Virus record (IMG/VR): IMGVR_UViG_3300044633_003049
Coordinates: 147,785 to 211,784 of that record
Reading direction: 5' to 3' (one strand)
Length of the DNA: 64,000 nt
A program made the position numbers and the translations under genes. The notes under the pieces are model-generated. The model worked only from the letters and a program-made list of their open reading frames with translations. It was not told the DNA's origin and made no database searches. Of this stretch, positions 3,356-63,242 are shown piece by piece; position 1 is the stretch's first letter; each line of letters opens with the position of its first letter.

Positions 3356-3393
3356 AACTATTGATTAACTAATAAATATATTAGTTTTTGGTT

Positions 3394-10243: not shown

Positions 10244-10297
10244 TCTTTTAATAAATAGAAAAAAGGAGATTTTCTACTATTATAAACAAAAAACATT

Positions 10298-12130: not shown

Positions 12131-12131
12131 C

Positions 12132-12584: not shown

Positions 12585-12614
12585 ATTCAATAAATATAAA
12601 CAATACGAAAATGG

Positions 12615-21198: not shown

Positions 21199-21402
21199 TT
21201 AATCTTGTAATAATTGTCTACCGTCGTTTGTGACGTATTTTTTATTTATTCTTTCAACGATTCCGTCTTTTTCTCTGATTGTATAACATTCTCCAGTCAT
21301 CAAATCACATTCTTCTCTTTCCATTCCGTCTTGAGAAACTCTCTTAACATTCTTTGGAGTTAAGAATTGATCTACCGTATTATTTAATTTATTATTTTCC
21401 AT
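21199..21402 (-). CDS. Hypothetical protein
   Basis: 67-aa ORF with upstream TATTTAT motif. Confidence 0.6.
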   Translation of the reverse strand: MENNKLNNTVDQFLTPKNVKRVSQDGMEREECDLMTGECYTIREKDGIVERINKKYVTNDGRQLLQD

Positions 21403-21450
21403 AATATTTCTTTTATTAATATAAATATCCTAAATATTGTTATTATTCAA

Positions 21451-27294: not shown

Positions 27295-27607
27295 AATATA
27301 AGTTATACAATTCTACGCCGTTTTTATAATCTTGTAAAGAGGTTACCAAAGGAAACGGTACCCTTATATAAGAATTATCTGGTATTTCAAATTCAATACT
27401 ACCCACGGATGGGTTTGCTGATAATATTAACCAACCAAACATTGGTGAGTTGTAATATTCTTGTGATAAAATATCTAATCTATGTTTTCCTTTTTTATAT
27501 TGGAAAAATTTATCTGTTGATTTAATTGGTATTTCTATTCCAGGGACAATTCTAAATTTTCCGTCGGTAATATAATCTTGGTATCTATTGTAATAATTTC
27601 TACTCAT
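27281..27607 (-). CDS. Baseplate protein with LysM-like domain (gp53/gpX-like)
   Basis: RLDILSQEYYNSPMFGWLILSANP...IPDNSYIRVP. Confidence 0.75.
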   Translation of the reverse strand: MSRNYYNRYQDYITDGKFRIVPGIEIPIKSTDKFFQYKKGKHRLDILSQEYYNSPMFGWLILSANPSVGSIEFEIPDNSYIRVPFPLVTSLQDYKNGVELYNLYYGEQ

Positions 27608-32367: not shown

Positions 32368-32396
32368 TTTTTATTTTATTATAAATAGGTTTAATA

Positions 32397-34325: not shown

Positions 34326-34340
34326 ATACTAATAAATAGA

Positions 34341-35261: not shown

Positions 35262-35300
35262 AAATAAAAAAACCGATACCCATTTCTGGTATATCGGTTT
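35262..35300 (-). terminator. Intrinsic terminator after the tail tube gene
   Basis: Minus strand aaaccgatataccagaaatgggtatcggtttttttat; GAAA loop. Confidence 0.8.
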
Positions 35301-35321
35301 CTCATATGAAAAATTATTATA

Positions 35322-35810
35322 TTAATAAACTTGGATACAACGGTCCATTCTTAATGAAGCGTCAATTGTTGCCAAATCATCTCTTGAGTAATCTAAATCA
35401 CCGAAGTTCAAACTTGTTAAGAAACAACCTTGTAAAATCCATTTTTCAACCACAACTCCCGTTGGGTCTAACATCTCCAATTCAATGTCTTTCTTATAAC
35501 CCGCAGCATATCCCATACGACCTGTAACTGACTCCGCATGTAAACGGAACCATTCCATAAGTGCTTGAGAAGCAGAAGGACCAATTGGGTCTTTAAATTG
35601 AACTTTAATCTCTTCCCACTCAAATTGACCAGCAACATAAGTTTTTGTGTTCAAGAAAGGAATCTCAACTGATTTAATTTTAGCAGATGGTCTCGCTGTG
35701 GAGAATACATACCACTCATTTATTCCTAAAGATGATGGAAATCTTAGGATAAATCTATTTTTTCTTTTCGGTTCGTAAGGAACCGGCATTTTCATTAATA
35801 AATCTGCCAT
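35322..35810 (-). CDS. Tail tube protein (gp19-like)
   Basis: YEPKRKNRF, RPS, YVAGQFEWEEI, YKKDIELEMLDPTG..VEKW.L.GCF, GDLDY; follows the sheath gene. Confidence 0.9.
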   Translation of the reverse strand: MADLLMKMPVPYEPKRKNRFILRFPSSLGINEWYVFSTARPSAKIKSVEIPFLNTKTYVAGQFEWEEIKVQFKDPIGPSASQALMEWFRLHAESVTGRMGYAAGYKKDIELEMLDPTGVVVEKWILQGCFLTSLNFGDLDYSRDDLATIDASLRMDRCIQVY

Positions 35811-35946
35811 ATTGTATTTGTTAAAGTTTTTAAGTTATTTACTTTCTTATAAATATATCTATATTGGAAAATAATTTTATTTTAAGTTTTTTATTGGAAA
35901 TACTTGTTTATGTCAATTATTTTTCGTAGTTTTTTACAGGCTCCAG

Positions 35947-36022
35947 TATCTAGTTCCAGTTTACTACTCTCCTTTAATAATTTAATATTTCAATAATAAA
36001 TACTAGTATATCTAGTTCCAGT
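35947..36022. repeat. 14-bp direct repeat tatctagttccagt in the sheath-tube intergenic region
   Basis: Exact copies at 35947-35960 and 36009-36022. Confidence 0.85.
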
Positions 36023-36080
36023 ATTCTGGGTATAATATAATAGTATAATTGTTATATAATATGGTTCTACGTGGAGCATT

Positions 36081-36111
36081 AAAAAAGGGTACCATTTCTG
36101 ATACCCTTCTT
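36081..36111 (-). terminator. Intrinsic terminator after the sheath gene
   Basis: Minus strand aagggtatcagaaatggtacccttttttaa. Confidence 0.75.
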
Positions 36112-36134
36112 ATTTTTATATATCTCCTTTTAGA

Positions 36135-38966: not shown

Positions 38967-39010
38967 TGATTTTTGTTTGGTTAAATTGTTTTTATTACTT
39001 ATCTAATAAA

Positions 39011-39079
39011 TATCTTTGTTTTTACCAAAGATTTCCTAACTTTTATTAAAAAGATAGTTATTTATCTTTAATTATCTTT
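39011..39079. promoter_or_regulatory. Array of AAAGAT(A)/(T)ATCTTT repeats between the divergent sheath and RHH genes (putative operator)
   Basis: tatcttt 39011, caaagat 39026, aaagata 39050, tatcttt 39063 and 39073. Confidence 0.5.
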
Positions 39080-39082
39080 TAT

Positions 39083-39241
39083 ATGGAAAACAAACAAAAA
39101 AACGTTAAAATAGGTCAGAAACACCACGAAATGTTAAAAAATTTTTGTGATAAAAATGGATTAAAAATTTATAAAGTATTGGAAAAACACATTGAGGAAC
39201 TTTGTAAACCTAAAAAGAAGGACATTTACGGAGATGATTAG
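39083..39241 (+). CDS. Small ribbon-helix-helix-like DNA-binding protein (not in ORF track)
   Basis: Hand translation MENKQKNVKIGQKHHEMLKNFCDKNGLKIYKVLEKHIEELCKPKKKDIYGDD (52 aa): strand KNVKI, helix, G-turn, helix. Confidence 0.7.
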   Translation: MENKQKNVKIGQKHHEMLKNFCDKNGLKIYKVLEKHIEELCKPKKKDIYGDD

Positions 39242-39741
39242 TATAGATAAGATATACTAATTTTTGACCCAACTTTAGGATTGGAGAGATATGTAATTTC
39301 ATCGTCTCCCGTAATCTCAAACCCAACTGACTCTTCTTCAGCTAATCCATTGGTTTCAACTGTTATTAAACTATTGATGTAATTACTTAAGTTAAACACC
39401 GTTGATGTAGAGTAAATAAACTCTTCTTTTTCATATTGTAATAATTTACCCTTATTATCTAATATTACACTATTAATTCCTTTATAAAATTGTACCGTTA
39501 TTATTGAGTTATTTAACGGAGGTTCAATAAAAGTAATCGTACTTGTAAAGTTTATAAACGTAAAACTTAAATCTCTTATTTGACCAATACCGTTCATTGA
39601 AACTGAAAATAAGGTTCCGATATTAGTTCCAACACTAAAATTAGTTTGTGTTCCGTCCGCAACAAAACTGACCGTTGTTATATTAATCGGCATGTTTTGA
39701 CTCTGACTTGAAACGACATTATCTTTTATAAATTCGTACAT
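39238..39741 (-). CDS. Structural protein, stand-alone paralog of the C-terminal domains of the upstream gene
   Basis: MYEFIKDN...DGTQTNFSVGTNIGTLF matches MFEFIKDN...DGIQTVFDVGESIGTLF in the upstream ORF. Confidence 0.7.
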   Translation of the reverse strand: MYEFIKDNVVSSQSQNMPINITTVSFVADGTQTNFSVGTNIGTLFSVSMNGIGQIRDLSFTFINFTSTITFIEPPLNNSIITVQFYKGINSVILDNKGKLLQYEKEEFIYSTSTVFNLSNYINSLITVETNGLAEEESVGFEITGDDEITYLSNPKVGSKISISYLY

Positions 39742-39751: not shown

Positions 39752-41032
39752 TTAAAATAAATATCCTACCGATATATTTGAATTTATTGATGGTCTATCC
39801 GATAAAATAATATACGAGTTATCATCTGAAACAATAAATCCGATACCTTGTTGTTCTGCCAATCCATTAATCTCAACTGTAACAACACTATTAATCATTT
39901 CATTTGTATCAAACATTGGTCTATTATTGGTTGGTGGGTCAAAAAAAGATCCCGAACCTGTGAATTGAAACTCTTCTCTAACAAAACTAAAAATTGTACC
40001 TGATGTTCCTACTATTCTACTATTTTTACTTTTATAATAAACAATGGTGAGTTTACTTCCGGCGGTTGGGATATATGGAGAAACAAATTCTATTTTTGAA
40101 GTGTAAGTAATATGTAAATAATTTGTATTTTTTGTTTGTAATACATCATTTACATAAACACCGAATAATGTACCAATACTTTCACCAACATCAAAAACAG
40201 TTTGAATTCCGTCAACTGCTAAATTTACAGTTTGTATTATATCATTAGTATTAACAACTTTATTGACACCAAATTTGGGATTGTCTTTTATAAACTCAAA
40301 CATGGTAAATAATCTATTAATGGCGGGTTTCACTTCAAACTCCTCACTATCTATCAAATAACCTAACATTGTAAATTGGTAATTCTGAACGTAAAATCTA
40401 CGTCCGTCAATCGTTTCAATTGGACTATTATCTTCAATCTTATCAAGAACAATAGGAATGTAATGTCCTTTAATCATTGTGTAATCTTGTCTTGACGCAA
40501 AGTGACGTAATATGATTTTATTAAACTTGTTTAAATCTCTAAATTTATTACATATAATTGTTACATCATAAGTAATATCCACAGGGATAGGTTGTGGGAT
40601 TGTATATATATCCGCACCTAATTGTGAACCATTCCAATTCGGAACTGATGCATAATAAACTTGGTATCTATCGGGTATTGTTCTTTGAACTGCCGGATTT
40701 GTTCCAAATTGAACGTCAGGTTTTCTAATGGTTGCAATAAATGGAAGTTGCATGTTCCCGTCTTCATCACTAAACGACCAATTCTGCATAAACTCTCCCC
40801 ATCTTTGTATTGTAAGAATTTTATTTATAATTGGGATTTGTTTACCGTCAGTTACAACCTTAAATGTTTTTGTAACATAATCTAACATACCCCTATCTAA
40901 ATCATCGTGTAATATAGAATCGGGAAGATTCGTATCTGATTTGGTAATATTATCCAAAAGTTCCTGTCTCCTTTTAGTGAGTTCAGAACCTTTATAGATT
41001 TCAATATTTGTTTTTCTTTTAGGTATTCCCAT
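39752..41032 (-). CDS. Tail completion/terminator-like protein (gp15-like N-terminus) with C-terminal beta-sandwich extension
   Basis: DLDRGMLDYV, LPFI...R, PIPVDITYDVTI; start MGIPKRK at 41032 preferred because the track start overlaps the upstream gene. Confidence 0.55.
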   Translation of the reverse strand: MGIPKRKTNIEIYKGSELTKRRQELLDNITKSDTNLPDSILHDDLDRGMLDYVTKTFKVVTDGKQIPIINKILTIQRWGEFMQNWSFSDEDGNMQLPFIATIRKPDVQFGTNPAVQRTIPDRYQVYYASVPNWNGSQLGADIYTIPQPIPVDITYDVTIICNKFRDLNKFNKIILRHFASRQDYTMIKGHYIPIVLDKIEDNSPIETIDGRRFYVQNYQFTMLGYLIDSEEFEVKPAINRLFTMFEFIKDNPKFGVNKVVNTNDIIQTVNLAVDGIQTVFDVGESIGTLFGVYVNDVLQTKNTNYLHITYTSKIEFVSPYIPTAGSKLTIVYYKSKNSRIVGTSGTIFSFVREEFQFTGSGSFFDPPTNNRPMFDTNEMINSVVTVEINGLAEQQGIGFIVSDDNSYIILSDRPSINSNISVGYLF

Positions 41033-41033: not shown

Positions 41034-41552
41034 TTATACTCCTCTAAATGTATTGTCTTGTACCGCAGTACATACAATGTTTCTATAATATGGTTTGTAA
41101 CCAAACATATTATGTTTATTATCTGATGTTACCTTTCCGTCATTTGAAACATTATAATATCTTGTTCTTGTTTCAGATTCAGGATATCCAATAAAATCTC
41201 CGTATTTAATGTCAACCTTCAATTCTTCTAAATGTTTTATATATACCGATAATGTCATATTACCTGGTTCGTTGTATCTTAATAACCCACCTTTATATGT
41301 ACTATTCTTTGGTTCTTCTATTTTAACTAACGCATAAAACTCAATAGGTGGGAAATATTTAATTTCATCCACTCCAACTTCGGCGTAAACGTCGTCGTTT
41401 TCTGTTTTTTGTTTATCTACACGATATAGTACCAATTTTATCCCCAAATCACCATGAAGGTACTCCTGACCCATTTGAATATTTAAATCAAAGTCGTCTT
41501 GAGAAAGGAATTTGGACATTCTCGTAATAGGTAGTTTATTATTCATATCCAT
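41034..41552 (-). CDS. Head closure / neck protein (gp14-like)
   Basis: Position upstream of the tail-completion gene; LYRVD, GNMTLSVYIKHLEELKVDIKYGDFI. Confidence 0.5.
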   Translation of the reverse strand: MDMNNKLPITRMSKFLSQDDFDLNIQMGQEYLHGDLGIKLVLYRVDKQKTENDDVYAEVGVDEIKYFPPIEFYALVKIEEPKNSTYKGGLLRYNEPGNMTLSVYIKHLEELKVDIKYGDFIGYPESETRTRYYNVSNDGKVTSDNKHNMFGYKPYYRNIVCTAVQDNTFRGV

Positions 41553-41600
41553 ATAAATAGTTTAATCTTTCATTCTATTTAGTTATATTGTATATATTAT

Positions 41601-44351: not shown

Positions 44352-44390
44352 AAGTTCAAATTTACACTATTTATTAGAATATACCAAATT

Positions 44391-45506
44391 ATGGCCACTA
44401 TTATTACACCGGAAGAAAGAGATAAATTATATACGCAGGTTTTTCACCTTTTGGGGATGCCAGTTCGTGGAATTGAACTTACACAGGAACAAATGGATAC
44501 CTTTTTAGAGTTATCTCTATCAGAATACGAACAATACGTTAGTGATTGGTTAATTGAGTCTCAATGGTCAGCATTGGCCGGACTTGATTTAGATACACAA
44601 TCCCTTTCAAGGGCTTTCACAACAAGAAGTTTAGATTACGAAACTCAATATACTCACTCATATTCCAAAATTGTAGGTTTACAGGCTGGAGGAACAAGTG
44701 AATTAAAGAAGGACTATTTTACAGTTTCACAAGGTCAACAAGTATATGAAATCCCTGCTGGTCGTGAAATTAACGAGTTATTATACTTTACACGTGCAAC
44801 TTTAAATGACTCAATTGTTGATCCATTTTTAGGTGGTTTTGGTGCACTTGGTGGTGTTGGTTTCGGTGGTGTGGGTGGATATGCTCAAGTTGGGACCGCT
44901 GGTTCATATTTTATGACACCGGGTTTTGACCTATTATTAAGAATGCAAGATAGAAACTTTAAGAGTAGAATGATTGGTGGTGATTTAACTTATAAGATTA
45001 CCGCGGGTCCTGAAGGTAAGAAATTGGTACACCTTTATAACGTACCAGGTGGTAAATTTGACTTTGGTTCTATCGCTAAAAATAACTACAACGTTTGGTA
45101 TTGGTACTATGAAACTATGGATAGAGATACTTGTTTAGAGAAAAACAAAGATGTTATTAAATTACCTTCGGATGTAATGACGGAAGAATTAACATGGGGT
45201 AGTTTAAATAAACCTTCACAGAATTGGGTTAGAAAATATCTAATCGGTTATTCTAAAGAAGGTTTAGGTCGTATATGGGGTAAGTTTTCAGGTGATTTAC
45301 AAGTTCCTGATAGTACAATTAAATTAGATTACAGTTCATTAATTACTGAAGGTAAAGATGAAAAATCTAAATTGGTTGAAGAACTTATGGCAAGATTAGA
45401 AAGATTACGTCCTGACAAAATACTTGAAAGAAAAGCAGGTGAGGCAGAGAACCTAAACAAATCTCTTAAGTTTAGAGCAATGCCTGCACCTATTAATATT
45501 ATCTAA
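44391..45506 (+). CDS. Neck / head-tail adaptor protein (gp13-like)
   Basis: LGMPVRGIELTQEQMDTFLELSLSEY N-terminus; WVRKY.....KEGLGRIWGKF; LITEGKDEK..L.EEL. Confidence 0.8.
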   Translation: MATIITPEERDKLYTQVFHLLGMPVRGIELTQEQMDTFLELSLSEYEQYVSDWLIESQWSALAGLDLDTQSLSRAFTTRSLDYETQYTHSYSKIVGLQAGGTSELKKDYFTVSQGQQVYEIPAGREINELLYFTRATLNDSIVDPFLGGFGALGGVGFGGVGGYAQVGTAGSYFMTPGFDLLLRMQDRNFKSRMIGGDLTYKITAGPEGKKLVHLYNVPGGKFDFGSIAKNNYNVWYWYYETMDRDTCLEKNKDVIKLPSDVMTEELTWGSLNKPSQNWVRKYLIGYSKEGLGRIWGKFSGDLQVPDSTIKLDYSSLITEGKDEKSKLVEELMARLERLRPDKILERKAGEAENLNKSLKFRAMPAPINII

Positions 45507-48491: not shown

Positions 48492-48845
48492 TTAAAAAAT
48501 ATTAATGTATAATTTTTCCTTAACGGGTAATATAAGTTTATTACCATTATCAAACGACACATTTACTTTTCCTTCAAATTTACCTATTTCAGATGTCTGT
48601 TGTTCAGTGAATCTATAAACGATATAATATTCGTCAGTCGTTTGGTTATATAATTTTGTTCTTGTTGTGATATTACAAGTTTCATTTAATAATACGGGTT
48701 CACCGGTACTAACATCAAACATGTCAAATGTGATTGTTGCATTTTCCAATAAATCATTAAATGATGATTTGTCGTTTTTACCGTCATCAATCATCCTCAT
48801 TTTTAATATTGGGTCAGATGCCCCTTGTCTTATAAAGAATTCCAT
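48492..48845 (-). CDS. BppU N-terminal-like baseplate/adaptor domain protein
   Basis: FFIRQGASDPILKM, ATITFDM, YRF...QT...GKFEGKVNV.F....LILP. Confidence 0.55.
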   Translation of the reverse strand: MEFFIRQGASDPILKMRMIDDGKNDKSSFNDLLENATITFDMFDVSTGEPVLLNETCNITTRTKLYNQTTDEYYIVYRFTEQQTSEIGKFEGKVNVSFDNGNKLILPVKEKLYINIF

Positions 48846-48867
48846 ATGTTATAAATATATATTTTTG

Positions 48868-50988
48868 TTATAAACCGTATTTAGATTTGTCTGCGTTATA
48901 GTTATTCAAAACTTCAGTTGATGTTAATGCACTACTATATAAACGGGTTATACCAATCTTACCATCAAAGTATTGTGGGTATTCACCATTATTATATGAA
49001 CCAATGTATAAGTTTGTAGTAGTGTTTAATATACTTGCTAAACTGTGATTTACAGTACCGATACTAACACCATTAACAAATGTTTGAAATGTATTGGCCG
49101 CAACATTAGTAAATACATAAACTATTTGATACCATGTATTAAGTGTTGCGGTGTGGTTTGTACTATTAACAAATAGTGTTGATCCTGAACCCGCACCCGA
49201 ACCATATTGTCCATAAAATGTTGAAGCAGTTGTTCTAACACTATAACCCACACTTGTTGTTAACCCAGCTGCGTTAAATTTACCAAGTACTACATCATTA
49301 CCTGCTACTGATTGATTCACCCAAACTTCTACTGTCCAATCACCACTTCCCGGTTCTAATGCCGCATTATCTGCAACTGAAATTTGTGATGAAGAACCAT
49401 TGTATGTGAAGTATGGTGATGTATATGTTATATTACTCATTGTTCCATTCAAATCATTACCTGATAAATCATTAATTGTTGTTCCACTACCAGGATATGA
49501 AGAAAGGTTTGATGGGTCGTAATGTAATACTAAATTGCTTGTAGTTATCCCACTTGCGGCGACACTTGGTGTGGGTGTAACTGAATTGGTAGGTGTGACC
49601 GTATTAGTGGGGGTATTAGTGGGTGTATTCGTTGGAGTTTGCGTAGGTGTTTCAGTAACCGTAGGAGTTGGTGTGTTAGTTGGAGTAGGTGTTGGGGTTT
49701 CACTTCCTGTTGGTGTTGGTGTGTTAGTCGGTGTATTAGTCGGCGTTTGCGTTGGAGTAACGGTATTTGTTGGTGTCGAAGTAATTGTGTTAGTAGGAGT
49801 GTTTGTAGGTGTAATACTTGGTGTTGGTGTATTGGTTGATGTATTAGTTGGTGTAACAGTATTAGTAGGAGTAACAGTATTAGTAGGTGTTGGTGTGTTA
49901 GTTGGTGTTGGTGTTGGGCTTGGTAAAACATCTGAACAACCATATATTGAATAATTTGGTTTAATTGATGTTAAATAATGATGATTAACATGAACAAAAT
50001 CCAACGGTTCTTCAAAATACTTAACTTGTTTTAAAACACCATTAAGTGAATTATTACCAAAAATTTGTACGATTTCATTTTCAGAAGACCTTAATGATGG
50101 AATTATTTCCTCAAAGTTTTCTAATTTATATATTCTTTTACCGTTATGATAAATTTTAAGTGTTCCTAATCTTTTTTGTTTTTCTCCTGCCCATTTTTTA
50201 TTTAATTCTTCCACATAACTATATTCAGTATCCCCCGTAATCCAATTTAATGATCCGGTAACCATTGTATAACCTGTGGTGATTTGTGTTGAGTGACCTA
50301 TAAATGAACCCGAAAAGAAACTACCAGTATCACCAGTTGTCGGAGCCCATAATTCATCAGTATAACTAACTGCGTGTGGACCTAATATTAAATCATTAAA
50401 TCCCCCCTCATTCTCAATCTCACAACCATAAAGATATGTGTATCTATCAAATGTGATTGTAATATTAAAATCGTCATATATTCCATTTGCACATAATTCA
50501 GGAGTATTACCTGTTATTGTGTAATATGACTCCGTGTACCCACTATCTGGATTACATAATCCCGAATAATGAAATGACTCCCATTTTATCTTTTTATTAT
50601 TGGTAAATGAGAATGTTAAATTATTATCCGCGTAATTCCCATTAGCCAAATCATCTTTAATTCCTAAATAGTAAAATGTCGTTCCAGTTACTAATCTATC
50701 AAAAACCAAATCTAATGTCCAACCCTTCTCTGTTCTTCTACGAACAGTAAAATCACAGGTGTCTCCCGTATAACGAGTATTCACCGCAACTTCCCAAGGT
50801 GAAGTTAGTCCCGTTAAACAAGAAGAATCGATAGTTAGTCCTGTATATGTTATTTCCGTGTCGAAATCTAAGACCTCTTCATTATAATCCATTTGAACTT
50901 TTGATAGTTCATAGTCATATAATTCGGAATAATCTACCTTTAAATCGAGTTTGGAACCGTAAAATCTTAAAATATTCTGATTAGCCAT
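48868..50988 (-). CDS. Virion protein with Pro/Thr mucin-like linker and C-terminal LamG/concanavalin A-like domain
   Basis: LVLHYD...[50 protein letters not shown]; start MANQN at 50988 preferred. Confidence 0.8.
49545..49920. repeat. Low-complexity Pro-Thr repeat (TPTPTNTPT)
   Basis: Translation of the 48868 ORF. Confidence 0.9.
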
Positions 50989-50989: not shown

Positions 50990-51030
50990 TTTATATAAAT
51001 ATCTTTCATAACATTTGATATTTATATAAA
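50990..51030. promoter_or_regulatory. Perfect 14-bp inverted repeat forming back-to-back putative late promoters
   Basis: tttatataaatatc 50990-51003 and gatatttatataaa 51017-51030, between divergent genes. Confidence 0.7.
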
Positions 51031-51041: not shown

Positions 51042-51815
51042 ATGAATAATTTTATAAAACAGGTAATTGAGGAGAAATTTGCATCAAAAGCACAACAAAG
51101 ATTCTTCTATGCAAAAGCCAAAGGGGGTAAAAATAAGAAGTGGTCCAAATGGGCCAAAGAGTTTTCTGATAAAACAGATTATAATAAAATACCTGATAAA
51201 GTAGAAAAAGAAGAAGAGGTGGATGAGATTGTAGATAAAAATGGTAATATCTTAACAAGTAAAAAACCTTCGGATTTAGATGCTAAAGGTGTTAGTTCCG
51301 ATTCAACAAGTGATGAAGTGGCTCTAACTGGTAAAGGTATGATGGGTAATTACGGTATGACTAAGGTTCAAAACTACACAAAGTTCTGGGGAGAGGGTAA
51401 ATTAACCAAAGGAGAACTTATTGAAATTGCAATGAAAGATGCTCTTGGATTTGATGCAACAATGGGAAATGACGCAGATTACGAAGAGGCTGAAGAATAT
51501 TTTGAAAAAGATTTAGGTTTGGACAGTGAAGAAACTGAAGATAGAATGGATCAAATGGGTTATGATAAAAATTTACCTGACGATAAGGTTAGATTAGTTG
51601 AGAACCCAAAGAAGTATATGGAGGAATATATTGAGAGTATTCTTAAAGGTAGAAGTAAAGATAATGATGTTTTAGAAAAGGAAAAGGAAGAAGTTGAACC
51701 AAAAGAAATACACCCAATTATTAAAAGACAACTTAATTCATTAAAAAATAGTATGGATAGTCACGGTTTAACTGCTGACGATGTAATTAATTATATTAAA
51801 AAAGATAATGAATAA
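51042..51815 (+). CDS. Hypothetical protein (putative head-internal)
   Basis: Charged 257-aa ORF with TATTTAT upstream. Confidence 0.7.
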   Translation: MNNFIKQVIEEKFASKAQQRFFYAKAKGGKNKKWSKWAKEFSDKTDYNKIPDKVEKEEEVDEIVDKNGNILTSKKPSDLDAKGVSSDSTSDEVALTGKGMMGNYGMTKVQNYTKFWGEGKLTKGELIEIAMKDALGFDATMGNDADYEEAEEYFEKDLGLDSEETEDRMDQMGYDKNLPDDKVRLVENPKKYMEEYIESILKGRSKDNDVLEKEKEEVEPKEIHPIIKRQLNSLKNSMDSHGLTADDVINYIKKDNE

Positions 51816-53529: not shown

Positions 53530-53562
53530 AAAATATTATATTAAAATAAAATATTTATTAGT

Positions 53563-54135
53563 ATGTCACAAGGAAAAGGAACAATATCATCTAACGATTT
53601 AATGCAAAAATTAGTTAATGCTAAAAAGGTTATGAATAAAGTAGACGGCGGAAACTACGAAAGAGGTCATGTAAATGAAGAAATGTTAAGGTCTAATCCA
53701 GAAGATTTAATGAATAGTCAAGATTTACCACAACAATCTTCTACAAAACAAATGGGTATGCCGTCTGTTGATAAAATACAAAATTCTAAATTACCTGACG
53801 CAATTAAAAAAGCAATGATTGAGAATCCAATTCAACAAATATCTTTAAATGATACACTTGATATGGATTTCTTAAAAGGTGCTAAAAGATTAATGGAACA
53901 AGAAGGTGTCGGTAAAAAACAACCACAACAAAAACAAGTAGTACAATATAATAGTAATATTGATATGGGGGCAATTGCCACACTTATTGAAAATACAGTT
54001 CGTAAAGTGATGGACGAAAAGTTAAATCAAATATTAACAGCATCAACCACAGCATCAATTAATGAAAATTTAGTATTAAAGGTAGGTGATTCAATATTCA
54101 AAGGTAAAATCACTGGTGTAAATAAAGCAAAGTAA
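53563..54135 (+). CDS. Hypothetical protein
   Basis: 190-aa ORF with TATTTAT upstream. Confidence 0.7.
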   Translation: MSQGKGTISSNDLMQKLVNAKKVMNKVDGGNYERGHVNEEMLRSNPEDLMNSQDLPQQSSTKQMGMPSVDKIQNSKLPDAIKKAMIENPIQQISLNDTLDMDFLKGAKRLMEQEGVGKKQPQQKQVVQYNSNIDMGAIATLIENTVRKVMDEKLNQILTASTTASINENLVLKVGDSIFKGKITGVNKAK

Positions 54136-56537: not shown

Positions 56538-56580
56538 TGATATTTATAAACAATAAACAGAACTTTTAAAACTATCAATT

Positions 56581-57312
56581 TTGGCATATAAAACTAGAAC
56601 CAAAACAACCAACCACCCACCCGTATTAGTAGAAGAGAAGAAGATATCACATAAGGATAGGATTAGACAAATCATCAAACGTCCTAAAGAAAAGTTCCTA
56701 ACGAAAAACCAAGAAATTTATTGGAACATTCTTGGAGAAAATCAAATAACATTATGTTTCGGTCCCGCAGGTGTAGGTAAGTCCTACATAGCAATGAAAC
56801 GTGCTGTGGACCTATTATACGACGATTCTAACAAGTATGAGAAGATTATCATAGTTAGGCCCGCAGTTGAAGCTGAAGAGAAATTAGGGTCACTTCCAGG
56901 GGGTTTAGAAGAGAAATTAGACCCATACATTTATCCGTCATATTATCTATTAAACAAAATTATTGGTAAGGAATCAAGAGAAGAACTAAAAGACCAAGGT
57001 TATATTGAGGTTGCTGCTCTCGCTTACATGAGAGGTTGGAACGTAGATAATACTATTCTTGTTTTTGAGGAAGCACAAAATGCTACCCCATCACAAATTA
57101 AGTTATTATTAACTCGTATTGGATTTAATTCCAAATTTTTCTTATCAGGAGACCTTGAACAATCAGATAAATTTAGAGATAAAACTAAATCTGGTTTATT
57201 TGATGCCAAAATGAGATTACAAGATGTTAAGGGAATTGGTATTTTTGAATTTGGAATGCAAGACATTGTACGAAACCCAATCATTGGTGAAATATTGAAT
57301 AGGTACGATTAA
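56581..57312 (+). CDS. phoH: PhoH-family ATPase
   Basis: GPAGVGKSY, RPAVE, GSLPG, YMRGWN, EEAQN, GDLEQSD, DIVRNP; TTG start. Confidence 0.92.
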   Translation: MAYKTRTKTTNHPPVLVEEKKISHKDRIRQIIKRPKEKFLTKNQEIYWNILGENQITLCFGPAGVGKSYIAMKRAVDLLYDDSNKYEKIIIVRPAVEAEEKLGSLPGGLEEKLDPYIYPSYYLLNKIIGKESREELKDQGYIEVAALAYMRGWNVDNTILVFEEAQNATPSQIKLLLTRIGFNSKFFLSGDLEQSDKFRDKTKSGLFDAKMRLQDVKGIGIFEFGMQDIVRNPIIGEILNRYD

Positions 57313-57372: not shown

Positions 57373-57408
57373 ATTTACTTATGGTTATGAATATGTTATA
57401 TTTTTATT

Positions 57409-58053
57409 ATGGAAATTTTTATTAGTATAGATGGTGTTATAAGAAACACAATTCAAAAATTTGACTTTCATTATAAGGATTCTTATTTGGATAGTGAAAG
57501 TGAAGATGTCTTTGAATACGACATAACGGAACCAATTCAAAACGACAATTTATTAAATTCTTATAAATTTCAATCACAAGAAGAATTTGAATATTTTTTA
57601 TTTGTTGAATACCCAATTGAAATATTTGGTCACGCTGGTTTGAGTTACTCCACCACATTTACGGATTTACATAAAATGATTTTTGATAATCCTGAACACA
57701 ATTTTACATTAGTTGGTTTAGATGAATTAGGTAAAGCAAAACCTGCAACACTTTTCTTCTTATCAAAAAATGGATTCATGGGTAATAATATTAAATCTAT
57801 TAAAACTGAAAACTTAAATGAGAATTGGAATAAGTGTGATGTTTGGATTACTGATTGTAAAAAAATTGTTGACTCGTGTCCAAGTGATAAAGTTGTAATT
57901 AAATTTAATACGACTTATAATCAATACTTTACAAATAAAAAAGAAATAACTAAATTAACAGAAATACAAGAACCATGGTTGAAATCTTTGGAAAAATCTA
58001 CTACATTGACCTTGACGGAGTCACAGACAAATGTAGAACAGGAAAAAATATAA
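57409..58053 (+). CDS. HAD-like 5'(3')-deoxyribonucleotidase (NT5C-like) with degenerate catalytic motifs
   Basis: ISIDGVIRN motif I, CDVWITD motif IV, FNTTYN. Confidence 0.55.
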   Translation: MEIFISIDGVIRNTIQKFDFHYKDSYLDSESEDVFEYDITEPIQNDNLLNSYKFQSQEEFEYFLFVEYPIEIFGHAGLSYSTTFTDLHKMIFDNPEHNFTLVGLDELGKAKPATLFFLSKNGFMGNNIKSIKTENLNENWNKCDVWITDCKKIVDSCPSDKVVIKFNTTYNQYFTNKKEITKLTEIQEPWLKSLEKSTTLTLTESQTNVEQEKI

Positions 58054-59314: not shown

Positions 59315-60094
59315 ATGAAAAATATAACAGTAATTTTACCTTTACATAAATTAGATGATGATTATAAAGTTATGTTAAATAACGCGTTATCGTCTATCGA
59401 GGATTTCCACAATGATGTTAAAGTGTCAATTGTTTGTCCAAGTAAATTAAAAAAAGATTTAGAGAATCTTTCTGAAAAATTAGAAATTGAAATTGTGGTT
59501 AATAAAGGTGAAACAGATTTTTGTTCACAAGTTAATTTAGGTATTGAGAAATGTGATACTGAATGGTTTACTATTTTAGAGGTTGATGATGAATTTAGAC
59601 CTATTTGGTTAAAATCAATCAACGATTATATGAAAATTTATAAAGATGTTGATGTATTTTTACCTATTGTAAGAGACATTAATACTGATGGTAAATTTGT
59701 AAGTTTTACAAATGAATCAGCTTGGGCATATGGTTTTACTGAAATGCAAGGATTCATTGACAATGAAGTATTATTAGATTTCCAAAATTATCAAATAAGT
59801 GGTGGTTTATATAGAACCCAAGTTATTAAGGATAACGGTAGTTTAAAAGAAAATATCAAATTAACATTCGCATACGAATTCTTTTTAAGATTAACACACA
59901 ATGGTATTAGGGTCATGACAGTTCCTAAAATCGGTTATCAACATGTAAACTTAAGAGAAGACTCATTATTTTGGGATTACAAGAATAATGAAAAACAAAA
60001 ACTGTCAGAAAATGAGGTTAAATTTTGGTTGGAAACTGCCAAAAAAGAATTCTTTTTTAAGAATAAACGAGATGTAAATTATGAAACAGTTTAA
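59315..60094 (+). CDS. Glycosyltransferase family 2 (GT-A fold)
   Basis: ITVILP, NLGIEKCDTEWFTILEVDD, YEFFLRL....IRV..VPKIGYQH. Confidence 0.85.
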   Translation: MKNITVILPLHKLDDDYKVMLNNALSSIEDFHNDVKVSIVCPSKLKKDLENLSEKLEIEIVVNKGETDFCSQVNLGIEKCDTEWFTILEVDDEFRPIWLKSINDYMKIYKDVDVFLPIVRDINTDGKFVSFTNESAWAYGFTEMQGFIDNEVLLDFQNYQISGGLYRTQVIKDNGSLKENIKLTFAYEFFLRLTHNGIRVMTVPKIGYQHVNLREDSLFWDYKNNEKQKLSENEVKFWLETAKKEFFFKNKRDVNYETV

Positions 60095-60793
60095 ATGCCG
60101 AGACCACGAACCCAAAAAATATACTTTGGTGAGGATCAAGAAAAAGCCGTCGTTAATTACCTAGAGAGTACTGACGAAGACGAAAGAAACAAAATATTCA
60201 ATGAGTTTTTAAGAGAACCATTAGTTATTATGGTTGAAAGTATTATTAGAAGATATAAATTATATAGGAAGGATATGGAATTTGAAGAAATTCACACCGA
60301 CACTATGTCTTTTTTAATCACCAAAATTAATAAATTTGACCACACAAAGAACACTAAAGCGTATTCATACTTTGGAACTATCTGTAAAAACTACCTTATG
60401 GGAGCAATACAGAAAGACACTAAAGAACAGAATAGACAAGTATCTTATGATGACATATCATCTGACATTGAAGATAGAAAAGATTTGTCTTATGTTATTG
60501 ATGAACATATTATTGATTATCAAAGTGTTATAATTAAATTAACCATTTCTTTAGAAAACTTTATTGAGAAGGAAAACCTAACGGAAAACGAACAAAAATT
60601 GGGATATGCCTTGTTAGAGATTTTTAGCAATTTTGATAAAATATTCCAAGTTGGGGATGGTAATAAATTCAATAAGAACCTTATCTTACTCTCATTACGA
60701 GAAATGACCTCATTATCCACAAAAGAGATTAGAGTATCCCTAAAACGTTTTAAAAAGATGTATGACGGTATTTTGGTTGGATTTTTAGAATAA
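60095..60793 (+). CDS. Sigma-70-like factor, T4 gp55-like late sigma candidate
   Basis: Region-2-like KINKFDHTKNTKAYSYFGTICKNY; N-terminal KIYF. Confidence 0.7.
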   Translation: MPRPRTQKIYFGEDQEKAVVNYLESTDEDERNKIFNEFLREPLVIMVESIIRRYKLYRKDMEFEEIHTDTMSFLITKINKFDHTKNTKAYSYFGTICKNYLMGAIQKDTKEQNRQVSYDDISSDIEDRKDLSYVIDEHIIDYQSVIIKLTISLENFIEKENLTENEQKLGYALLEIFSNFDKIFQVGDGNKFNKNLILLSLREMTSLSTKEIRVSLKRFKKMYDGILVGFLE

Positions 60794-60807
60794 ATCTATT
60801 TATTGAT

Positions 60808-61185
60808 ATGAGAACACAAAGAAACAATATTACTTTAGATGTTGATTCGGCGTTAGCCCTAATGCAGGAAATCTATAACGATGTTGTAGAGAATAGAAAT
60901 ACTGCGTCCCAAATTTTGAGAAAAATGATGGGATTTATGAAGGACGCTGAAGATATGAGTACAATTGGACCTGTTATTAAAGAACAACAGAAGATTTTAA
61001 ACGATTGTACCGAGAAGAAAATTTCATTAGTTAAATTACAAAGTTTACTATTAAAACAAACTACAGGTGGTGGTAATGGAGGTGGACCAATGGGTAAACT
61101 TACATTATCGGATGAAGATAGGGAGTTATTAGATAAACTGGTAAATGATGGTTCAGATAATAAACCAAGTAATTATTCATTATAA
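60808..61185 (+). CDS. Hypothetical coiled-coil protein
   Basis: 125 aa, TATTTAT upstream. Confidence 0.7.
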   Translation: MRTQRNNITLDVDSALALMQEIYNDVVENRNTASQILRKMMGFMKDAEDMSTIGPVIKEQQKILNDCTEKKISLVKLQSLLLKQTTGGGNGGGPMGKLTLSDEDRELLDKLVNDGSDNKPSNYSL

Positions 61186-63242
61186 TGTCATCATTAAACG
61201 ATAAATTAAGCGATCCAGCTTTTCAACAGAAATCAATAGAACAACCAGAAAAAGGACAACCCACTCCCAAAATATCTAAAACAAAGGTTTTAATTGCTAG
61301 AATTAAAGGGAAAATTCAGGCTGTTAAGGAATTTACCGAAAAGTATAACAATGCAATAGATGAGGATGGTTTTGGGGGTATTATTGATTTTAATGGAGAT
61401 GGTCCATTACTTGCGGATGCAAAAAGAAAAATAAAGAAAAAATTTACAGATTTAAAAACTAAACTGCAGAAAAAAAAAGATGCTGGAAAATTAAAAACCG
61501 ATATTTTTAGTCAAATTATTGATTTAGTTGATACTTTTTTAAATAAAAAAAAATCTACAACTTTTACTGTTAAAAAAACTTACGGGTCTAAATTAACAAC
61601 ACAAAACTTTGTGTCTAAAGACAGATTACATTTTTTAGCACATGAAGCCATTAATACAACAATAACGTCTTCTAAAAATATTGTGATGGATAACGTTAAA
61701 AATATCCTTTTTGCTGGAGACGGTATTTGTGGATCATCGACTCCAATCACGGGTAGTACGTTATTCATACGACCTGGTGAATTTGATTTTATGAATATTT
61801 TGACAATAAACCCAACTAGTAATAGTGGTCAAATTGTCTATGAACCACAAAATCCATCAAGGAATTTAATTAAAATGAATCGTACATTATATTCTACCTT
61901 TACAGCAACAGGAACTACATCGGTTGAAGCATCTGACGGAAAAAAACTATTTGACTTAGAATGGGTGGAAGCAGATCAAGAATTTAAATTAGATAATTTG
62001 TCAGGTGTTGTCACCTTGGCACAAACAGGTGCTACGGTTGGTGGTTTTTTTAATGATTATTATAGTAATATTGAACAGTTAGATTTGTCGGCAGTGGTCA
62101 AAACTGCAACGATGATGGTATTGAAAGGTGATAAATCTGAACCCCCGTTATTTGATATTGGTATGAATGATTTAAATAGATTACTAAATAAATTGATGAA
62201 AGTTTGTAATAACCCAAGTCAAGGATTAAATCAAAGTGCGGAAAATCAATTTAATGAAGACGATGAAGATATTGAATCTTATTTTGATTTTGACGATATG
62301 GAAGGTATTGATTTAGACGACGAGGCGAATAGATTCAATAAAGTTTTAAAATTTACAGATTGTAATAATTTTACAATACCATCAAATCCATCACACTATG
62401 AAGATTTTGTGTATCTTTCAAAAAACAATTTAGATGATGCAGTAAATGACGTCTTTTTAAATACTGCAACAACATCATATCAAGAAGCTGGTGGAACAAT
62501 ACCATTAGTTAATTTTCAAATATCGTTATTCAATAGTTATATTTTAAACTTACCTAAAGCATTGATTGGTTCTATTTTATCACCAAAGTATATTTTACCA
62601 ATTGTAATAATTTATAAATATATAAATTCAACGGGAGGTAATGTTGTTTTATTGGCAAAAGAAATAATGAAAAAATTACATAAATTGTTTTTCAAAATAA
62701 TTAAGGATATTTTATGGAAATTTATAAGTGAGTTTTGGAAATTAGTTAAAAAAGATTTACTTGAATTTTTAAAAATTACAGCGTGGAACATATTAAAAGA
62801 AAAAATTAAAAAATATAGAGATTATATTCTTTCTGTTATAAATTTATTACGTGGACTGTTGGACACAAAGCTTAATAACTGTAATGCATTATTTACTGTG
62901 ATTGATAAAACAATAGATGCTGCATTATTTGGGGGACCTAATTTTCAAGTTCCTGGTATTATTGATTCCTACGCTGATAAAAAATCAGGATTTAGTAATA
63001 CTAGAACTATTATCAATATCGTGAAACAATTAGAAAAACAAGGTATAAATGCATCCCAACCAATATTTGGTAAAGATAATAACTTATTAAATGTTTTGGC
63101 AACAACAGTCCAACAACACACTAAAGAAGTAAATAATAACTCTTACATGCACGGTTCAAATAAACCGATAACGGTGCCTGTTATTAATGGAGTGGCGGTA
63201 ATAGCACGAGGAGCACTTAAAGTCACTGGAGGACTAGCATAA
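61185..63242 (+). CDS. Hypothetical virion protein
   Basis: 685 aa, upstream of the spike gene; hydrophobic helical C-terminal half. Confidence 0.65.
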   Translation: MSSLNDKLSDPAFQQKSIEQPEKGQPTPKISKTKVLIARIKGKIQAVKEFTEKYNNAIDEDGFGGIIDFNGDGPLLADAKRKIKKKFTDLKTKLQKKKDAGKLKTDIFSQIIDLVDTFLNKKKSTTFTVKKTYGSKLTTQNFVSKDRLHFLAHEAINTTITSSKNIVMDNVKNILFAGDGICGSSTPITGSTLFIRPGEFDFMNILTINPTSNSGQIVYEPQNPSRNLIKMNRTLYSTFTATGTTSVEASDGKKLFDLEWVEADQEFKLDNLSGVVTLAQTGATVGGFFNDYYSNIEQLDLSAVVKTATMMVLKGDKSEPPLFDIGMNDLNRLLNKLMKVCNNPSQGLNQSAENQFNEDDEDIESYFDFDDMEGIDLDDEANRFNKVLKFTDCNNFTIPSNPSHYEDFVYLSKNNLDDAVNDVFLNTATTSYQEAGGTIPLVNFQISLFNSYILNLPKALIGSILSPKYILPIVIIYKYINSTGGNVVLLAKEIMKKLHKLFFKIIKDILWKFISEFWKLVKKDLLEFLKITAWNILKEKIKKYRDYILSVINLLRGLLDTKLNNCNALFTVIDKTIDAALFGGPNFQVPGIIDSYADKKSGFSNTRTIINIVKQLEKQGINASQPIFGKDNNLLNVLATTVQQHTKEVNNNSYMHGSNKPITVPVINGVAVIARGALKVTGGLA

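What the first reader, a model, noticed from the sequence alone, without database searches (positions are those of the whole stretch)
60095..60803. Candidate late regulon: sense-strand TATTTAT motif plus gp55-like sigma
Seen: TATTTAT on the coding strand within about 45 nt of the start of 16 genes. Forward positions are 3372, 10251, 12590, 21421, 32381, 34332, 35849, 39006, 41553, 48851 and 50995 (minus-strand genes) and 44368, 51019, 53552, 56541 and 60797 (plus-strand genes). It is absent before SSB, RecA, helicase, RNR and polymerase, some of which show TATATT-like boxes instead. It is the reverse complement of the core of the T4 late promoter TATAAATA. Inference: a -10-only late promoter of distinct specificity read by the sigma-like protein. 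phoH would then be a late gene.
Basis: partly seen in the sequence, partly recalled or inferred. Interest (0 to 1): 0.6.

Follow-up and report, generated by a model that had tools for sequence, protein, structure and literature searches.

The report
Late promoter box and its phage sigma
A freshwater jumbo phage marks its virion and lysis genes with an exact TATTTAT box placed just before the start codon. The box travels through evolution with a distant, two-domain relative of the T4 late sigma factor gp55, so it is most likely that factor's -10-only late promoter.

Summary
All 16 TATTTAT sites exist. The raw count in the window is not above chance, but the placement is. In the 211.8-kb record, 43 of 128 copies lie on the sense strand within 60 nt of a start, against 12.8 +/- 3.6 expected. 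In a complete 335.6-kb relative the figure is 89 of 234. No one-mismatch variant is comparably enriched. The box is depleted on both strands inside genes, is 90% conserved between orthologues, and has no -35 partner. It precedes tail fibre, sheath, tube, baseplate and lysis genes, and phoH, but not polymerase, RNR, helicases or the recombinase.

ORF 60095-60793 is a sigma-like protein. Its best PDB fold match is T4 gp55 (Z 10.8). It also carries a conserved extra C-terminal domain and belongs to an unnamed family of at least 1,301 clusters. Box and family co-occur in a Flavobacterium phage, a Microcystis phage and a 53%-GC contig. Those two phage genomes lack any canonical sigma.

Read in the same orientation, TATTTATA matches T4's TATAAATA at 6 of 8 positions, so the reverse-complement remark is a red herring. 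The spacing (never under 4 nt, mode 5) implies that many late mRNAs are leaderless.

The parts
60095..60793 (+). Sigma-like protein of 232 aa. It has an N-terminal sigma region-2 domain closest to T4 gp55 and a conserved C-terminal helical domain (about residues 142-232), possibly sigma-4-like. It is the proposed reader of the box.
   Evidence: Sequence matches: Pfam Sigma70_r2 E 1e-3, below the cut-off; phrog_234 'late sigma' E 5e-4; the only PDB sequence hit is gp55 7d7c_F, E 9e-4; 24 of 65 family members hit Sigma70_r2, best 5e-7.

Structure: AF2 model with pLDDT 92.7. The unbiased fold search puts gp55 7d7d_F on top: Z 10.8, 117 residues aligned, rmsd 5.0. Other sigma-2 domains follow. The C-terminal domain alone matches sigma-H and SigA region 4 only weakly, at Z 5.1-5.9.
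60797..60803 (+). TATTTAT box 4 nt before the ATG of the 125-aa gene 60808-61185, inside the 14-nt spacer after the sigma stop codon.
   Evidence: The box is invariant in about 40 distinct relatives while the flanking bases and the spacer length vary. The same arrangement occurs in 33-43%-identical family members, including a 53%-GC contig, and in the immuto phage.
56541..56547 (+). Box 33 nt before the TTG start of phoH (56581-57312).
   Evidence: PhoH Pfam match E 9e-62. The box is present in all but one of the 38 distinct relatives shown (lost in L080) while the upstream flank varies. PhoH is also preceded by the box in immuto.
53552..53558 (+). Box 4 nt before gene 53563-54135 (190 aa, unknown function).
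   Evidence: The box is gained and lost among relatives; variants such as TATTTAA occur.
51019..51025 (+). Rightward box of a back-to-back pair, 16 nt before gene 51042-51815.
   Evidence: Invariant in the 26 distinct relatives shown, down to 46% protein identity. It lies in a short divergent spacer that must hold two promoters.
50995..51001 (-). Leftward box of the pair, 6 nt before the ATG at 50988 of a protein similar to virion structural proteins (48868-50988).
   Evidence: Invariant in the 21 distinct relatives shown, always 6 nt from the ATG. phrog_8510 'virion structural protein'.
48851..48857 (-). Box 5 nt before gene 48492-48845 (117 aa).
44368..44374 (+). Box 16 nt before gene 44391-45506, whose C-terminal part weakly resembles a head-tail adaptor.
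   Evidence: phrog_211, E 1e-9, residues 272-337 only.
41553..41559 (-). Box abutting the first ATG of gene 41034-41552. A second in-frame ATG lies 6 nt further on.
39757..39763 (-). Box 15 nt before gene 39238-39741.
39006..39012 (-). Box 39 nt before the tail sheath gene (36135-38966).
   Evidence: Sheath homology. Lake metatranscriptome contigs cover the gene up to 38949, and none lies at 39028-39618 in four runs.
35849..35855 (-). Box 38 nt before the tail tube gene (35322-35810).
   Evidence: phrog_4542 'tail tube' E 4e-26. Metatranscriptome contigs cover 35285-35875 but almost nothing at 35876-36072.
34332..34338 (-). Box 6 nt before gene 32397-34325 (642 aa).
32381..32387 (-). Box 13 nt before gene 27607-32367 (1586 aa).
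21421..21427 (-). Box 18 nt before gene 21199-21402 (67 aa), which heads a run of small genes.
12590..12596 (-). Box 5 nt before the baseplate wedge gene (12132-12584).
   Evidence: phrog_261 and phrog_43 'baseplate wedge'.
10251..10257 (-). Box 7 nt before gene 6863-10243 (1126 aa).
3372..3378 (-). Box 16 nt before the collagen-like tail fibre gene (1025-3355).
   Evidence: Several tail-fibre PHROGs, best E 1e-43.
57396..57402 (+). TTATATT box of the other promoter class, 6 nt before gene 57409-58053. It is the nearest promoter-like box upstream of the unit that ends with the sigma gene, and no late box lies between it and the sigma gene.

Best explanation
TATTTAT(A/T) is the late promoter of this phage and of a wide clade of relatives. 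It is a single box that stands where a -10 or '-7' element stands, with no -35 partner.

It is recognised by the phage's own sigma-like protein (60095-60793) bound to host RNA polymerase core. The host is probably a member of the Bacteroidota. The N-terminal domain of the protein is a gp55-type sigma region 2, which would bind the unwound non-template strand. The tyrosine that stacks on the flipped adenine at box position 2 in T4 gp55 (Y97) is conserved here as Y92. The residues aligned with H95 and T99, which contact the adenines at box positions 5 and 6 in T4, are changed. The box itself differs from T4's TATAAATA at positions 4 and 5 (AA to TT), so only the H95 change coincides with a changed base.

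The sigma gene sits in a unit headed by a box of the other class (TTATATT, with an upstream TT element). It would therefore be made early or in the middle period and then switch on tail, baseplate, lysis and some auxiliary genes, phoH among them.

If the box occupies -12 to -5, as the Flavobacterium sigma-A box does, transcription starts on or within a few bases of the ATG for nearly half of the late genes. Many late mRNAs would then be leaderless.

Shown: the motif statistics, its conservation, its co-occurrence with the family, and the fold.
For: Placement and specificity
- G000 has 43 sense-upstream copies against 12.8 +/- 3.6 expected. G001 has 89 of 234, against 19 in the opposite orientation.
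- Before co-directional genes the sense:antisense counts are 72:7 and 38:11.
- The exact word is enriched 10-11 fold. None of its 21 one-mismatch neighbours exceeds 4.5 fold.
- No other conserved position appears in 89 aligned sites.

DNA-level signal
- Inside genes the word is depleted on both strands against codon-order shuffles. Ratios are 0.43 and 0.47 in G001, 0.37 and 0.38 in G000. Composition-matched controls give 0.61-1.19.
- Divergent spacers of 22-59 nt carry back-to-back boxes.

Conservation
- The box is invariant amid variable flanks in IMG/VR relatives.
- Among 132 orthologue pairs of G000 and G001, 27 carry it in both genomes and 6 in only one. That is 0.90 conserved, against 0.41 for other A/T 7-mers.

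Regulon
- Box-preceded genes include tail fibres, sheath, tube, baseplate wedge, a peptidase or endolysin-like protein and a virion-protein-like gene.
- Replication genes lack it.

Link to the protein
- The box recurs before terminase, portal, sheath, tube, hub, tape measure and PhoH in Flavobacterium phage immuto, whose homologue is 27% identical.
- It recurs before terminase, tube and other genes in Microcystis phage Mel-JY01, there upstream of separate GGAG sites.
- It lies directly after the sigma gene in family members on contigs of 27%, 38% and 53% GC.
- Immuto and Mel-JY01 have no Pfam sigma r2 or r4 match, so a canonical sigma cannot be the shared reader.

Fold
- gp55 is the top match among 48,161 PDB chains.
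- Y92, aligned with gp55 Y97, is kept in 62 of 65 family members. gp55 recognition residues are taken from PMC7892883.

Geometry
- No site lies at 0-3 nt from the ATG (control words: 11%). Sites at 4-8 nt number 41 of 89 (control words: 16.5%), with the mode at 5.
- The Flavobacterium sigma-A box lies at -12 to -5 (PMC9723704).

Expression
- Lake metatranscriptome contigs cover the tube and sheath genes. None lies for about 590 nt upstream of the sheath box, and almost none upstream of the tube box.
Against: - No mapped 5' end, no time course and no biochemistry exist. The metatranscriptome evidence comes from assembled contigs, which cannot show starts, and non-coding divergence could also explain the gaps.
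- The window protein alone is below Pfam's sigma cut-off. The profile-to-PDB E-values are weak, at 1e-3 to 0.05.
- No conserved -35 element partners the possible sigma-4-like domain.
- The phage has a second, canonical sigma that could read some class of promoters.
- Some box-preceded genes are not classic late genes: a DNA methyltransferase, a NifU-like protein, a kinase-like protein and an antiterminator-like protein.
- Two family members lack the box right after the sigma gene (L113, L114).
- Boxes 4 nt from the ATG require a start one base closer than the host geometry predicts.
Confidence: 0.7

Rival explanations
1. The box is a promoter, but it is read by a host sigma (sigma-A or an alternative host sigma), perhaps remodelled by a phage factor as in T4 middle transcription. 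Alternatively, in this jumbo phage it is read by the second, RpoD-like phage sigma. The 232-aa protein would then do something else.
For: The box shares TA..T.T with the Bacteroidota sigma-A box TAnnTTTG and fits the same -12 to -5 spacing. A canonical sigma with Sigma70_r2 (E 4e-15) and Sigma70_r4 (E 8e-12) is encoded at G000 123014-123829 and in G001.
Against: The same exact word marks structural genes in phages of Flavobacterium and of Microcystis, whose host promoters differ. It also appears on a 53%-GC contig. Complete immuto and Mel-JY01 genomes have no canonical sigma but do have the 232-aa family. There is no -33 element, unlike the phage's TTATATT class.
Confidence: 0.17
2. The word acts in RNA, not DNA. 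It would be a site for an endoribonuclease that cuts polycistronic RNA before each late gene, or an AU-rich translation enhancer in a host without Shine-Dalgarno sites.
For: It is very close to start codons, at 4-8 nt in about half of the cases. Only 13 of 217 genes have a Shine-Dalgarno-like word. The exact-word specificity would also suit an RNA-binding protein.
Against: The word is avoided equally on the antisense strand of genes, which an mRNA signal does not predict. Distances range from 4 to 52 nt. In Mel-JY01 the box lies 20-40 nt upstream of separate GGAG sites. Divergent spacers of 22-32 nt hold two outward-facing boxes and no room for other promoters. RNA contigs do not lie upstream of the sheath box.
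Confidence: 0.08
3. It is a chance product of AT-rich intergenic DNA.
For: The genome is 31% GC, and the window-wide count (42) is below the shuffle mean of 58.
Against: z is about 8 against dinucleotide shuffles of the same upstream regions. The strand bias is 10:1. No one-mismatch neighbour behaves alike. Orthologous conservation is 90%. The box also occurs in a 53%-GC contig.
Confidence: 0.01

Closest known systems
Phage T4 late transcription: gp55 with the TATAAATA box (plus gp33 and the gp45 clamp)
   Same: A phage-made sigma region-2 protein redirects host core polymerase to an 8-bp TATA-like box at the -10 position. There is no -35 element, and the box sits before virion genes (PMC2988020; PMC7892883). 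gp55 is the best structural match. The boxes are identical at 6 of 8 positions in the same orientation. The stacking tyrosine (gp55 Y97, here Y92) is conserved.
   Different: - Box positions 4-5 are TT, not AA.
- The protein has 232 aa with a conserved C-terminal domain, whereas gp55 has 185 aa and lacks a sigma-4 domain.
- Residues aligned with gp55 H95 and T99 are Y and G.
- No gp45-type or DnaN-type clamp was detected, even in the complete relative.
- The box abuts the start codon in about half of the cases.
- Sequence similarity is marginal (E about 1e-3).
Bacteroidota sigma-A promoters (-33 TTTG and -7 TAnnTTTG)
   Same: An AT-rich 8-mer beginning with TA. The inferred position of -12 to -5 fits the observed spacing to the ATG. 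The phage's other class, TTATATT(AT) with an upstream TT element, resembles this type.
   Different: The late box has no upstream element. Its last three positions are ATW rather than TTG. It is also kept in a cyanophage.
Bacillus phage SPO1 gp28 and gp33/gp34; other phage-encoded sigma cascades (from my own knowledge)
   Same: Phage-encoded sigma-like proteins switch host polymerase between temporal classes.
   Different: Those promoters are bipartite (-35 and -10). The proteins are unrelated in sequence to this family as far as I tested; no such hit appeared.
Leaderless transcription units (mycobacteria, archaea, Deinococcus; GeneMarkS-2 paper PMC6028130, seen only as an abstract)
   Same: A promoter box at a fixed short distance from the start codon, so that the mRNA begins at or next to AUG.
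   Different: Here the pattern applies to a phage's temporal classes, in a host phylum where leaderless mRNAs are rare: 5.5% in F. psychrophilum. It is inferred from spacing only.

Membership tests
T4 gp55 late sigma family | A sigma region-2-like domain resembling gp55 | tested here: met
   gp55 is the only PDB sequence hit (E 9e-4, residues 24-145). It is the top fold match of 48,161 chains (Z 10.8, 117 residues aligned, rmsd 5.0). The phrog_234 match is only E 5e-4 over 72 residues.
T4 gp55 late sigma family | A small protein with region 2 only and no sigma-4 domain; gp33 supplies the flap contact | tested here: not met
   The protein has 232 aa, and residues about 142-232 form a confidently modelled helical domain. 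That domain is conserved over 65 diverse members. It gives weak matches to sigma region 4 (Z 5.1-5.9). I did not search for gp33.
T4 gp55 late sigma family | Works with a gp45 sliding clamp through a hydrophobic and acidic C-terminal epitope | tested here: inconclusive
   Pfam gp45-slide_C, DNA_PPF and DNA_pol3_beta_3 find nothing in G000 or in the complete G001. A divergent clamp could be missed. The C-terminal tail (...GILVGFLE) is hydrophobic and acidic, but tails vary across the family.
T4 gp55 late sigma family | Cognate promoter is an 8-bp TATA-like box at about -10, without a -35 element, before late genes | tested here: met
   There is a single box with no other conserved column. It precedes virion and lysis genes. 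The consensus differs from TATAAATA at 2 of 8 positions. Its position relative to the start site is not measured.
Sigma-70 family (Pfam Sigma70_r2) | A match to the region 2 model above the curated cut-off | tested here: inconclusive
   The window protein scores 19.2 bits against a cut-off of 24. Of 65 relatives, 24 match at E up to 0.01, best 5e-7. The family profile hits SigA region 2 at E 1e-3. There is no Sigma70_r4 or r4_2 match.
Bacteroidota sigma-A promoter (-33/-7) | TAnnTTTG at -12 to -5 plus TTTG near -33 | tested here: not met
   The late box has ATW at positions 6-8 and no upstream element. TAnnTTTG itself is barely enriched upstream of genes here: 22 of 334.

The most novel reading that the evidence does not exclude
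The 232-aa protein would be an unsplit counterpart of T4's 'split sigma' (gp55 plus gp33). A gp55-type region 2 fused to a flap-binding region-4-like domain would need neither gp33 nor a sliding clamp. This large, unnamed family would drive late transcription in phages of Bacteroidota and cyanobacteria from TATTTATW boxes. In the jumbo lineage, roughly half of the late mRNAs, and many early ones, would be leaderless, in a phylum where leaderless mRNAs are rare.
Probability: 0.3. Interest if true: 0.75.

Novelty: new variant of a known kind. Interest (0 to 1): 0.64.

Why it matters
Late transcription is understood in detail for T4 and its close kin, but hardly at all for the abundant T4-like and jumbo phages of Bacteroidota and freshwater cyanobacteria.

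This finding gives those phages a concrete, testable late promoter. It also names the likely specificity factor, a family of at least 1,301 sequence clusters that databases leave as 'hypothetical'.

The 6-of-8 relation to TATAAATA, together with the conserved stacking tyrosine and the changed pocket residues, offers a natural experiment in how gp55-type proteins read single-stranded promoter DNA.

The box can be used at once to annotate late regulons in metagenomic phage genomes, including auxiliary genes such as phoH. The spacing suggests widespread leaderless translation during infection of hosts that lack Shine-Dalgarno sites. A cultured system exists for testing: immuto on Flavobacterium sp. 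LMO8.

Tried and rejected
- Raw motif count in the window: not enriched, so only positional tests are meaningful.
- Single-sequence fold of the sigma-like protein: pLDDT 51, discarded.
- Foldseek against PDB: nothing at E <= 0.001, though the weak hits were nearly all sigma factors. VIA-align was used instead.
- hhalign of the family against the phage's canonical sigma: probability 5%, E 0.007, region 2 only.
- Pfam searches in G000 and G001 for RNA polymerase beta (PF00562), the gp45 clamp (PF09116, PF02916), DnaN (PF02768) and Sigma70_r4_2: no match.
- No tRNA genes in the first 148 kb.
- The sigma-70-type promoter scan is below its shuffle mean. The terminator scan found 13 against 7.2 +/- 2.7 and was not followed up.
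No host was found that way.
- The search for homologous proteins returned only relatives at 90% identity or more, all unnamed apart from two automatic 'AAA+ ATPase' labels.
- The Atlas search for the 125-aa neighbour found only unnamed viral clusters.
- Metatranscriptome contigs were laid on 5,901 bases. They are consistent with the promoter reading but cannot show starts. Adapter-like loose ends near the tube gene's ATG were seen, and I did not trust them.
- Literature searches for TATTTATA as a late promoter, for gp55 in Flavobacterium phages and for Mel-JY01 found nothing. The late motif proposed for Ma-LMM01 (TATTMT with a -35 part) is different.
- Reading the box as a T4-oriented TATAAATA on the opposite strand: rejected, because before co-directional genes it would point antisense (72:7).

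Full report
WHAT THE WINDOW IS

The window is the last 64 kb of a 211,784-bp IMG/VR virus record at 31% GC. CheckV rates the record 63% complete. It is collinear over its whole length, at 67-88% nucleotide identity, with a complete 335,630-bp relative, G001. It is therefore a fragment of a jumbo myophage of roughly 335 kb, not a prophage.

Relatives abound in lake and freshwater metagenomes and metatranscriptomes. The nearest cultured relatives are distant: Flavobacterium phage immuto and Microcystis phage Mel-JY01.

Only 13 of 217 genes have a Shine-Dalgarno-like word. Adenines are enriched at -3 and at -10 to -14. This pattern points to a Bacteroidota host, which is an inference.

THE OBSERVATION

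All 16 sites exist on the stated strands, 0-39 nt before an ORF start. The raw window count (42) is below the shuffle mean of 58, so abundance is not the signal. Placement is.

- Genome-wide, 43 of 128 copies lie on the sense strand within 60 nt of a start. Dinucleotide shuffles of those same regions give 12.8 +/- 3.6. The opposite orientation occurs 16 times.
- In G001, 89 of 234 copies are so placed, against 19 in the opposite orientation.
- Before co-directional genes the ratios are 72:7 and 38:11. A T4-oriented box on the other strand is therefore excluded.
- TATTTAT is the most enriched upstream 7-mer in both genomes.
- None of its 21 one-mismatch neighbours exceeds 4.5-fold enrichment, against 10-11 fold for the exact word.
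- Apart from weak preferences at the two bases before the word and A/T after it, no other column is conserved in 89 aligned sites. There is no -35 element.

A DNA-LEVEL SIGNAL UNDER SELECTION

- Against codon-order shuffles, the word is depleted inside genes on both strands. Ratios are 0.43 and 0.47 in G001, 0.37 and 0.38 in G000. Composition-matched control words give 0.61-1.19. An mRNA signal would be avoided on the sense strand only.
- In about 40 distinct IMG/VR relatives the word is invariant in the 14-20-nt spacer after the sigma gene. It is also invariant on both sides of a divergent spacer, and it is kept before phoH in all but one of 38 relatives. The flanks and the spacing vary.
- Among 132 orthologue pairs of G000 and G001 with aligned N-termini, 27 carry the box in both genomes and 6 in only one. 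That is 0.90 conserved, against 0.41 for other A/T-only 7-mers.
- Divergent spacers of 22-59 nt carry outward-facing box pairs and have room for little else.

THE REGULON

Box-preceded genes include:
- six collagen-like tail fibre genes;
- the tail sheath, tail tube and baseplate wedge genes;
- a gene whose C-terminal part weakly resembles a head-tail adaptor;
- a gene similar to virion structural proteins;
- a peptidase or endolysin-like gene.

They also include phoH, a DNA methyltransferase, a NifU-like gene, a kinase-like gene and an antiterminator-like gene.

DNA polymerase, RNR, the DnaB-like helicase, an exonuclease, the UvsX-like recombinase and an SF2 helicase lack the box.

Those genes, and many others, instead show a second word, TTATATT(AT). 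It has a TT(c/t) element about 20 nt upstream, which makes it a bipartite, host-like class. The sigma gene itself lies in a unit headed by such a box at 57396, with no late box in between.

THE PROTEIN

ORF 60095-60793 on its own is only marginally sigma-like:
- Sigma70_r2 E 1e-3, below the cut-off;
- phrog_234 E 5e-4;
- gp55 as the only PDB sequence hit, E 9e-4.

It belongs to a large family that public sources leave unnamed. The family has 1,301 representatives of 50%-identity clusters at E <= 1e-3, mostly 230-260 aa long and aligned end to end. Of 65 diverse members, 24 match Sigma70_r2, best 5e-7.

With that alignment AlphaFold gives pLDDT 92.7. Against 48,161 PDB representatives the top match is T4 gp55 (Z 10.8, 117 residues aligned, rmsd 5.0). 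Thirty of the next 31 hits are sigma factors. The C-terminal domain (about residues 142-232) matches sigma region 4 only weakly, at Z 5.1-5.9. I treat that assignment as tentative.

WHICH FACTOR READS THE BOX

The genome also encodes a canonical RpoD-like sigma outside the window, with r2 at E 4e-15 and r4 at E 8e-12. Co-occurrence decides between the two.

- In Flavobacterium phage immuto (homologue 27% identical), TATTTAT precedes terminase, portal, sheath, tube, hub, tape measure, PhoH and the gene after the sigma homologue.
- In Microcystis phage Mel-JY01 it is again the top upstream 7-mer. It stands before terminase, the tube gene and others, 20-40 nt upstream of separate GGAG sites.
- Both complete genomes lack any Pfam sigma r2 or r4 match.
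- Family members 33-43% identical to the window protein, on contigs of 27%, 38% and 53% GC, carry the box right after the sigma gene. On the 53%-GC contig it is the only copy in 10 kb.
- Two members do not carry it there (L113, L114).

The same exact word in phages of two host phyla argues for a phage-encoded reader.

RELATION TO T4

That is true, but TATAAATA is nearly palindromic. In the same orientation, TATTTATA and TATAAATA agree at positions 1-3 and 6-8 and differ only at positions 4-5.

In the gp55 open complex, the non-template adenines at -12, -9 and -8 enter pockets. Y97 stacks on A-12, N13 and H95 contact A-9, and T99 contacts A-8 (PMC7892883). These adenines are box positions 2, 5 and 6.

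In the HMMER alignment:
- Y97 aligns with Y92, which is kept in 62 of 65 members;
- R57 aligns with R53, and F86 with F81;
- H95 aligns with Y90, and T99 with G94, both conserved within the new family.

The position-2 pocket is therefore kept. The H95 change coincides with a changed base at position 5. The T99 change does not, because position 6 is A in both boxes. The alignment is at 18% identity, so this is an inference.

GEOMETRY

In G001 no box lies 0-3 nt from the ATG, whereas control A/T words do so 11% of the time. Forty-one of 89 boxes lie at 4-8 nt, against 16.5% for controls. The mode is 5 nt, and the remaining boxes spread over 11-48 nt.

The Flavobacterium sigma-A box occupies -12 to -5 (PMC9723704). 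With the 8-mer in that position, a 5-nt gap puts +1 on the A of ATG.

The TTATATT class has its mode at 6 nt, which gives the same geometry once the TAnnTT register is applied. I therefore infer that many mRNAs of both classes are leaderless or nearly so. The host phylum shows only 5.5% leaderless mRNAs. In immuto and Mel-JY01 the leaders are longer.

EXPRESSION DATA

Ten lake or freshwater metatranscriptome runs hold parts of the tube and sheath region. I laid contigs of four of them on 5,901 bases of the window.

- They cover the tube and sheath genes.
- They give zero depth at 39028-39618, upstream of the sheath box, in all four runs. One run has a contig at 39619-39815, and the rest up to 40200 is empty.
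- They give almost none at 35876-36072, upstream of the tube box.

This fits the promoter reading. However, contigs cannot show starts, and divergence of non-coding DNA could produce the same picture.

VERDICT

The motif is real, specific, oriented and conserved, and it behaves as a DNA signal. A late promoter is the best reading. The 232-aa gp55-like family is the best candidate reader, on co-occurrence and fold.

It works like T4 late transcription but is not a plain member of the gp55 family. It has an extra domain, no detectable gp45 clamp, and a box changed at two positions.

I found no description of this box or this family in the searchable literature.

Noticed in passing
G000 123014-123829 (-), outside the window (L007:3014-3829); orthologue in G001 near 214589: A second, canonical RpoD-like sigma of 271 aa (Sigma70_r2 E 4e-15, Sigma70_r4 E 8e-12). 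Its relatives occur in Lak phages, cyanophages and Bacillus phages. It has no late box upstream. It may serve a middle class or the TTATATT class.
   Followed up: partly
Window 57396-57402 (+) and about 45 other sites in G000, for example before the helicase gene at 41601: A second promoter-like class, TTATATT(AT), with a TT(c/t) element about 20 nt upstream and a modal 6-nt gap to the ATG. It stands before replication and many other genes, and it also implies starts at or next to the start codon.
   Followed up: partly
Whole record G000 against G001 (L090-L106): The record is labelled 'provirus' and rated 63% complete. Yet it is collinear end to end with a complete 335.6-kb phage genome. The label is probably wrong, and about 120 kb of the genome is missing from the record.
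   Followed up: yes
Window 56548-56580, the leader between the box and the phoH start: The leader sequence (aaacaATAAAcgg... and ttaaaac) and the TTG start codon of phoH are conserved across relatives far better than the DNA upstream of the box. This may be a regulatory 5' UTR.
   Followed up: no
Window 59315-63242 (+) and loci L110-L114: A conserved gene string: GT2 glycosyltransferase, the sigma-like gene, a small 106-163-aa gene, then a 412-685-aa gene. The string is kept in most family members (not L114). The small gene is usually headed by the late box. Both downstream proteins match no known family.
   Followed up: partly
G000 114052-114582 (-) (L006:14052-14582): A 176-aa protein matching phrog_6386 'transcription antiterminator' (E 8e-22). 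Its upstream region holds both box types.
   Followed up: no
G000 93469-111916 and window 1025-3355: Five very large collagen-like tail fibre paralogues of 776-1460 aa. Each has a late box upstream, at 16-22 nt in four cases and 61 nt in one.
   Followed up: no
Immuto phage, L107 and L108: Two other words are strongly enriched upstream of immuto genes: ATCAATAATTAAAA-like and TATATTTAGGTA-like. They are probably its early and middle promoter classes.
   Followed up: no
Window 35285-38950: Contigs from four lake metatranscriptomes, 90-99% identical to the window, cover the tail tube and sheath genes. Relatives of this phage are therefore probably actively infecting cells in lakes.
   Followed up: partly
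G000 12007-12417 (-) and window 56581-57312: The auxiliary genes (NifU-like Fe-S assembly protein, PhoH) sit behind late boxes rather than early ones.
   Followed up: no
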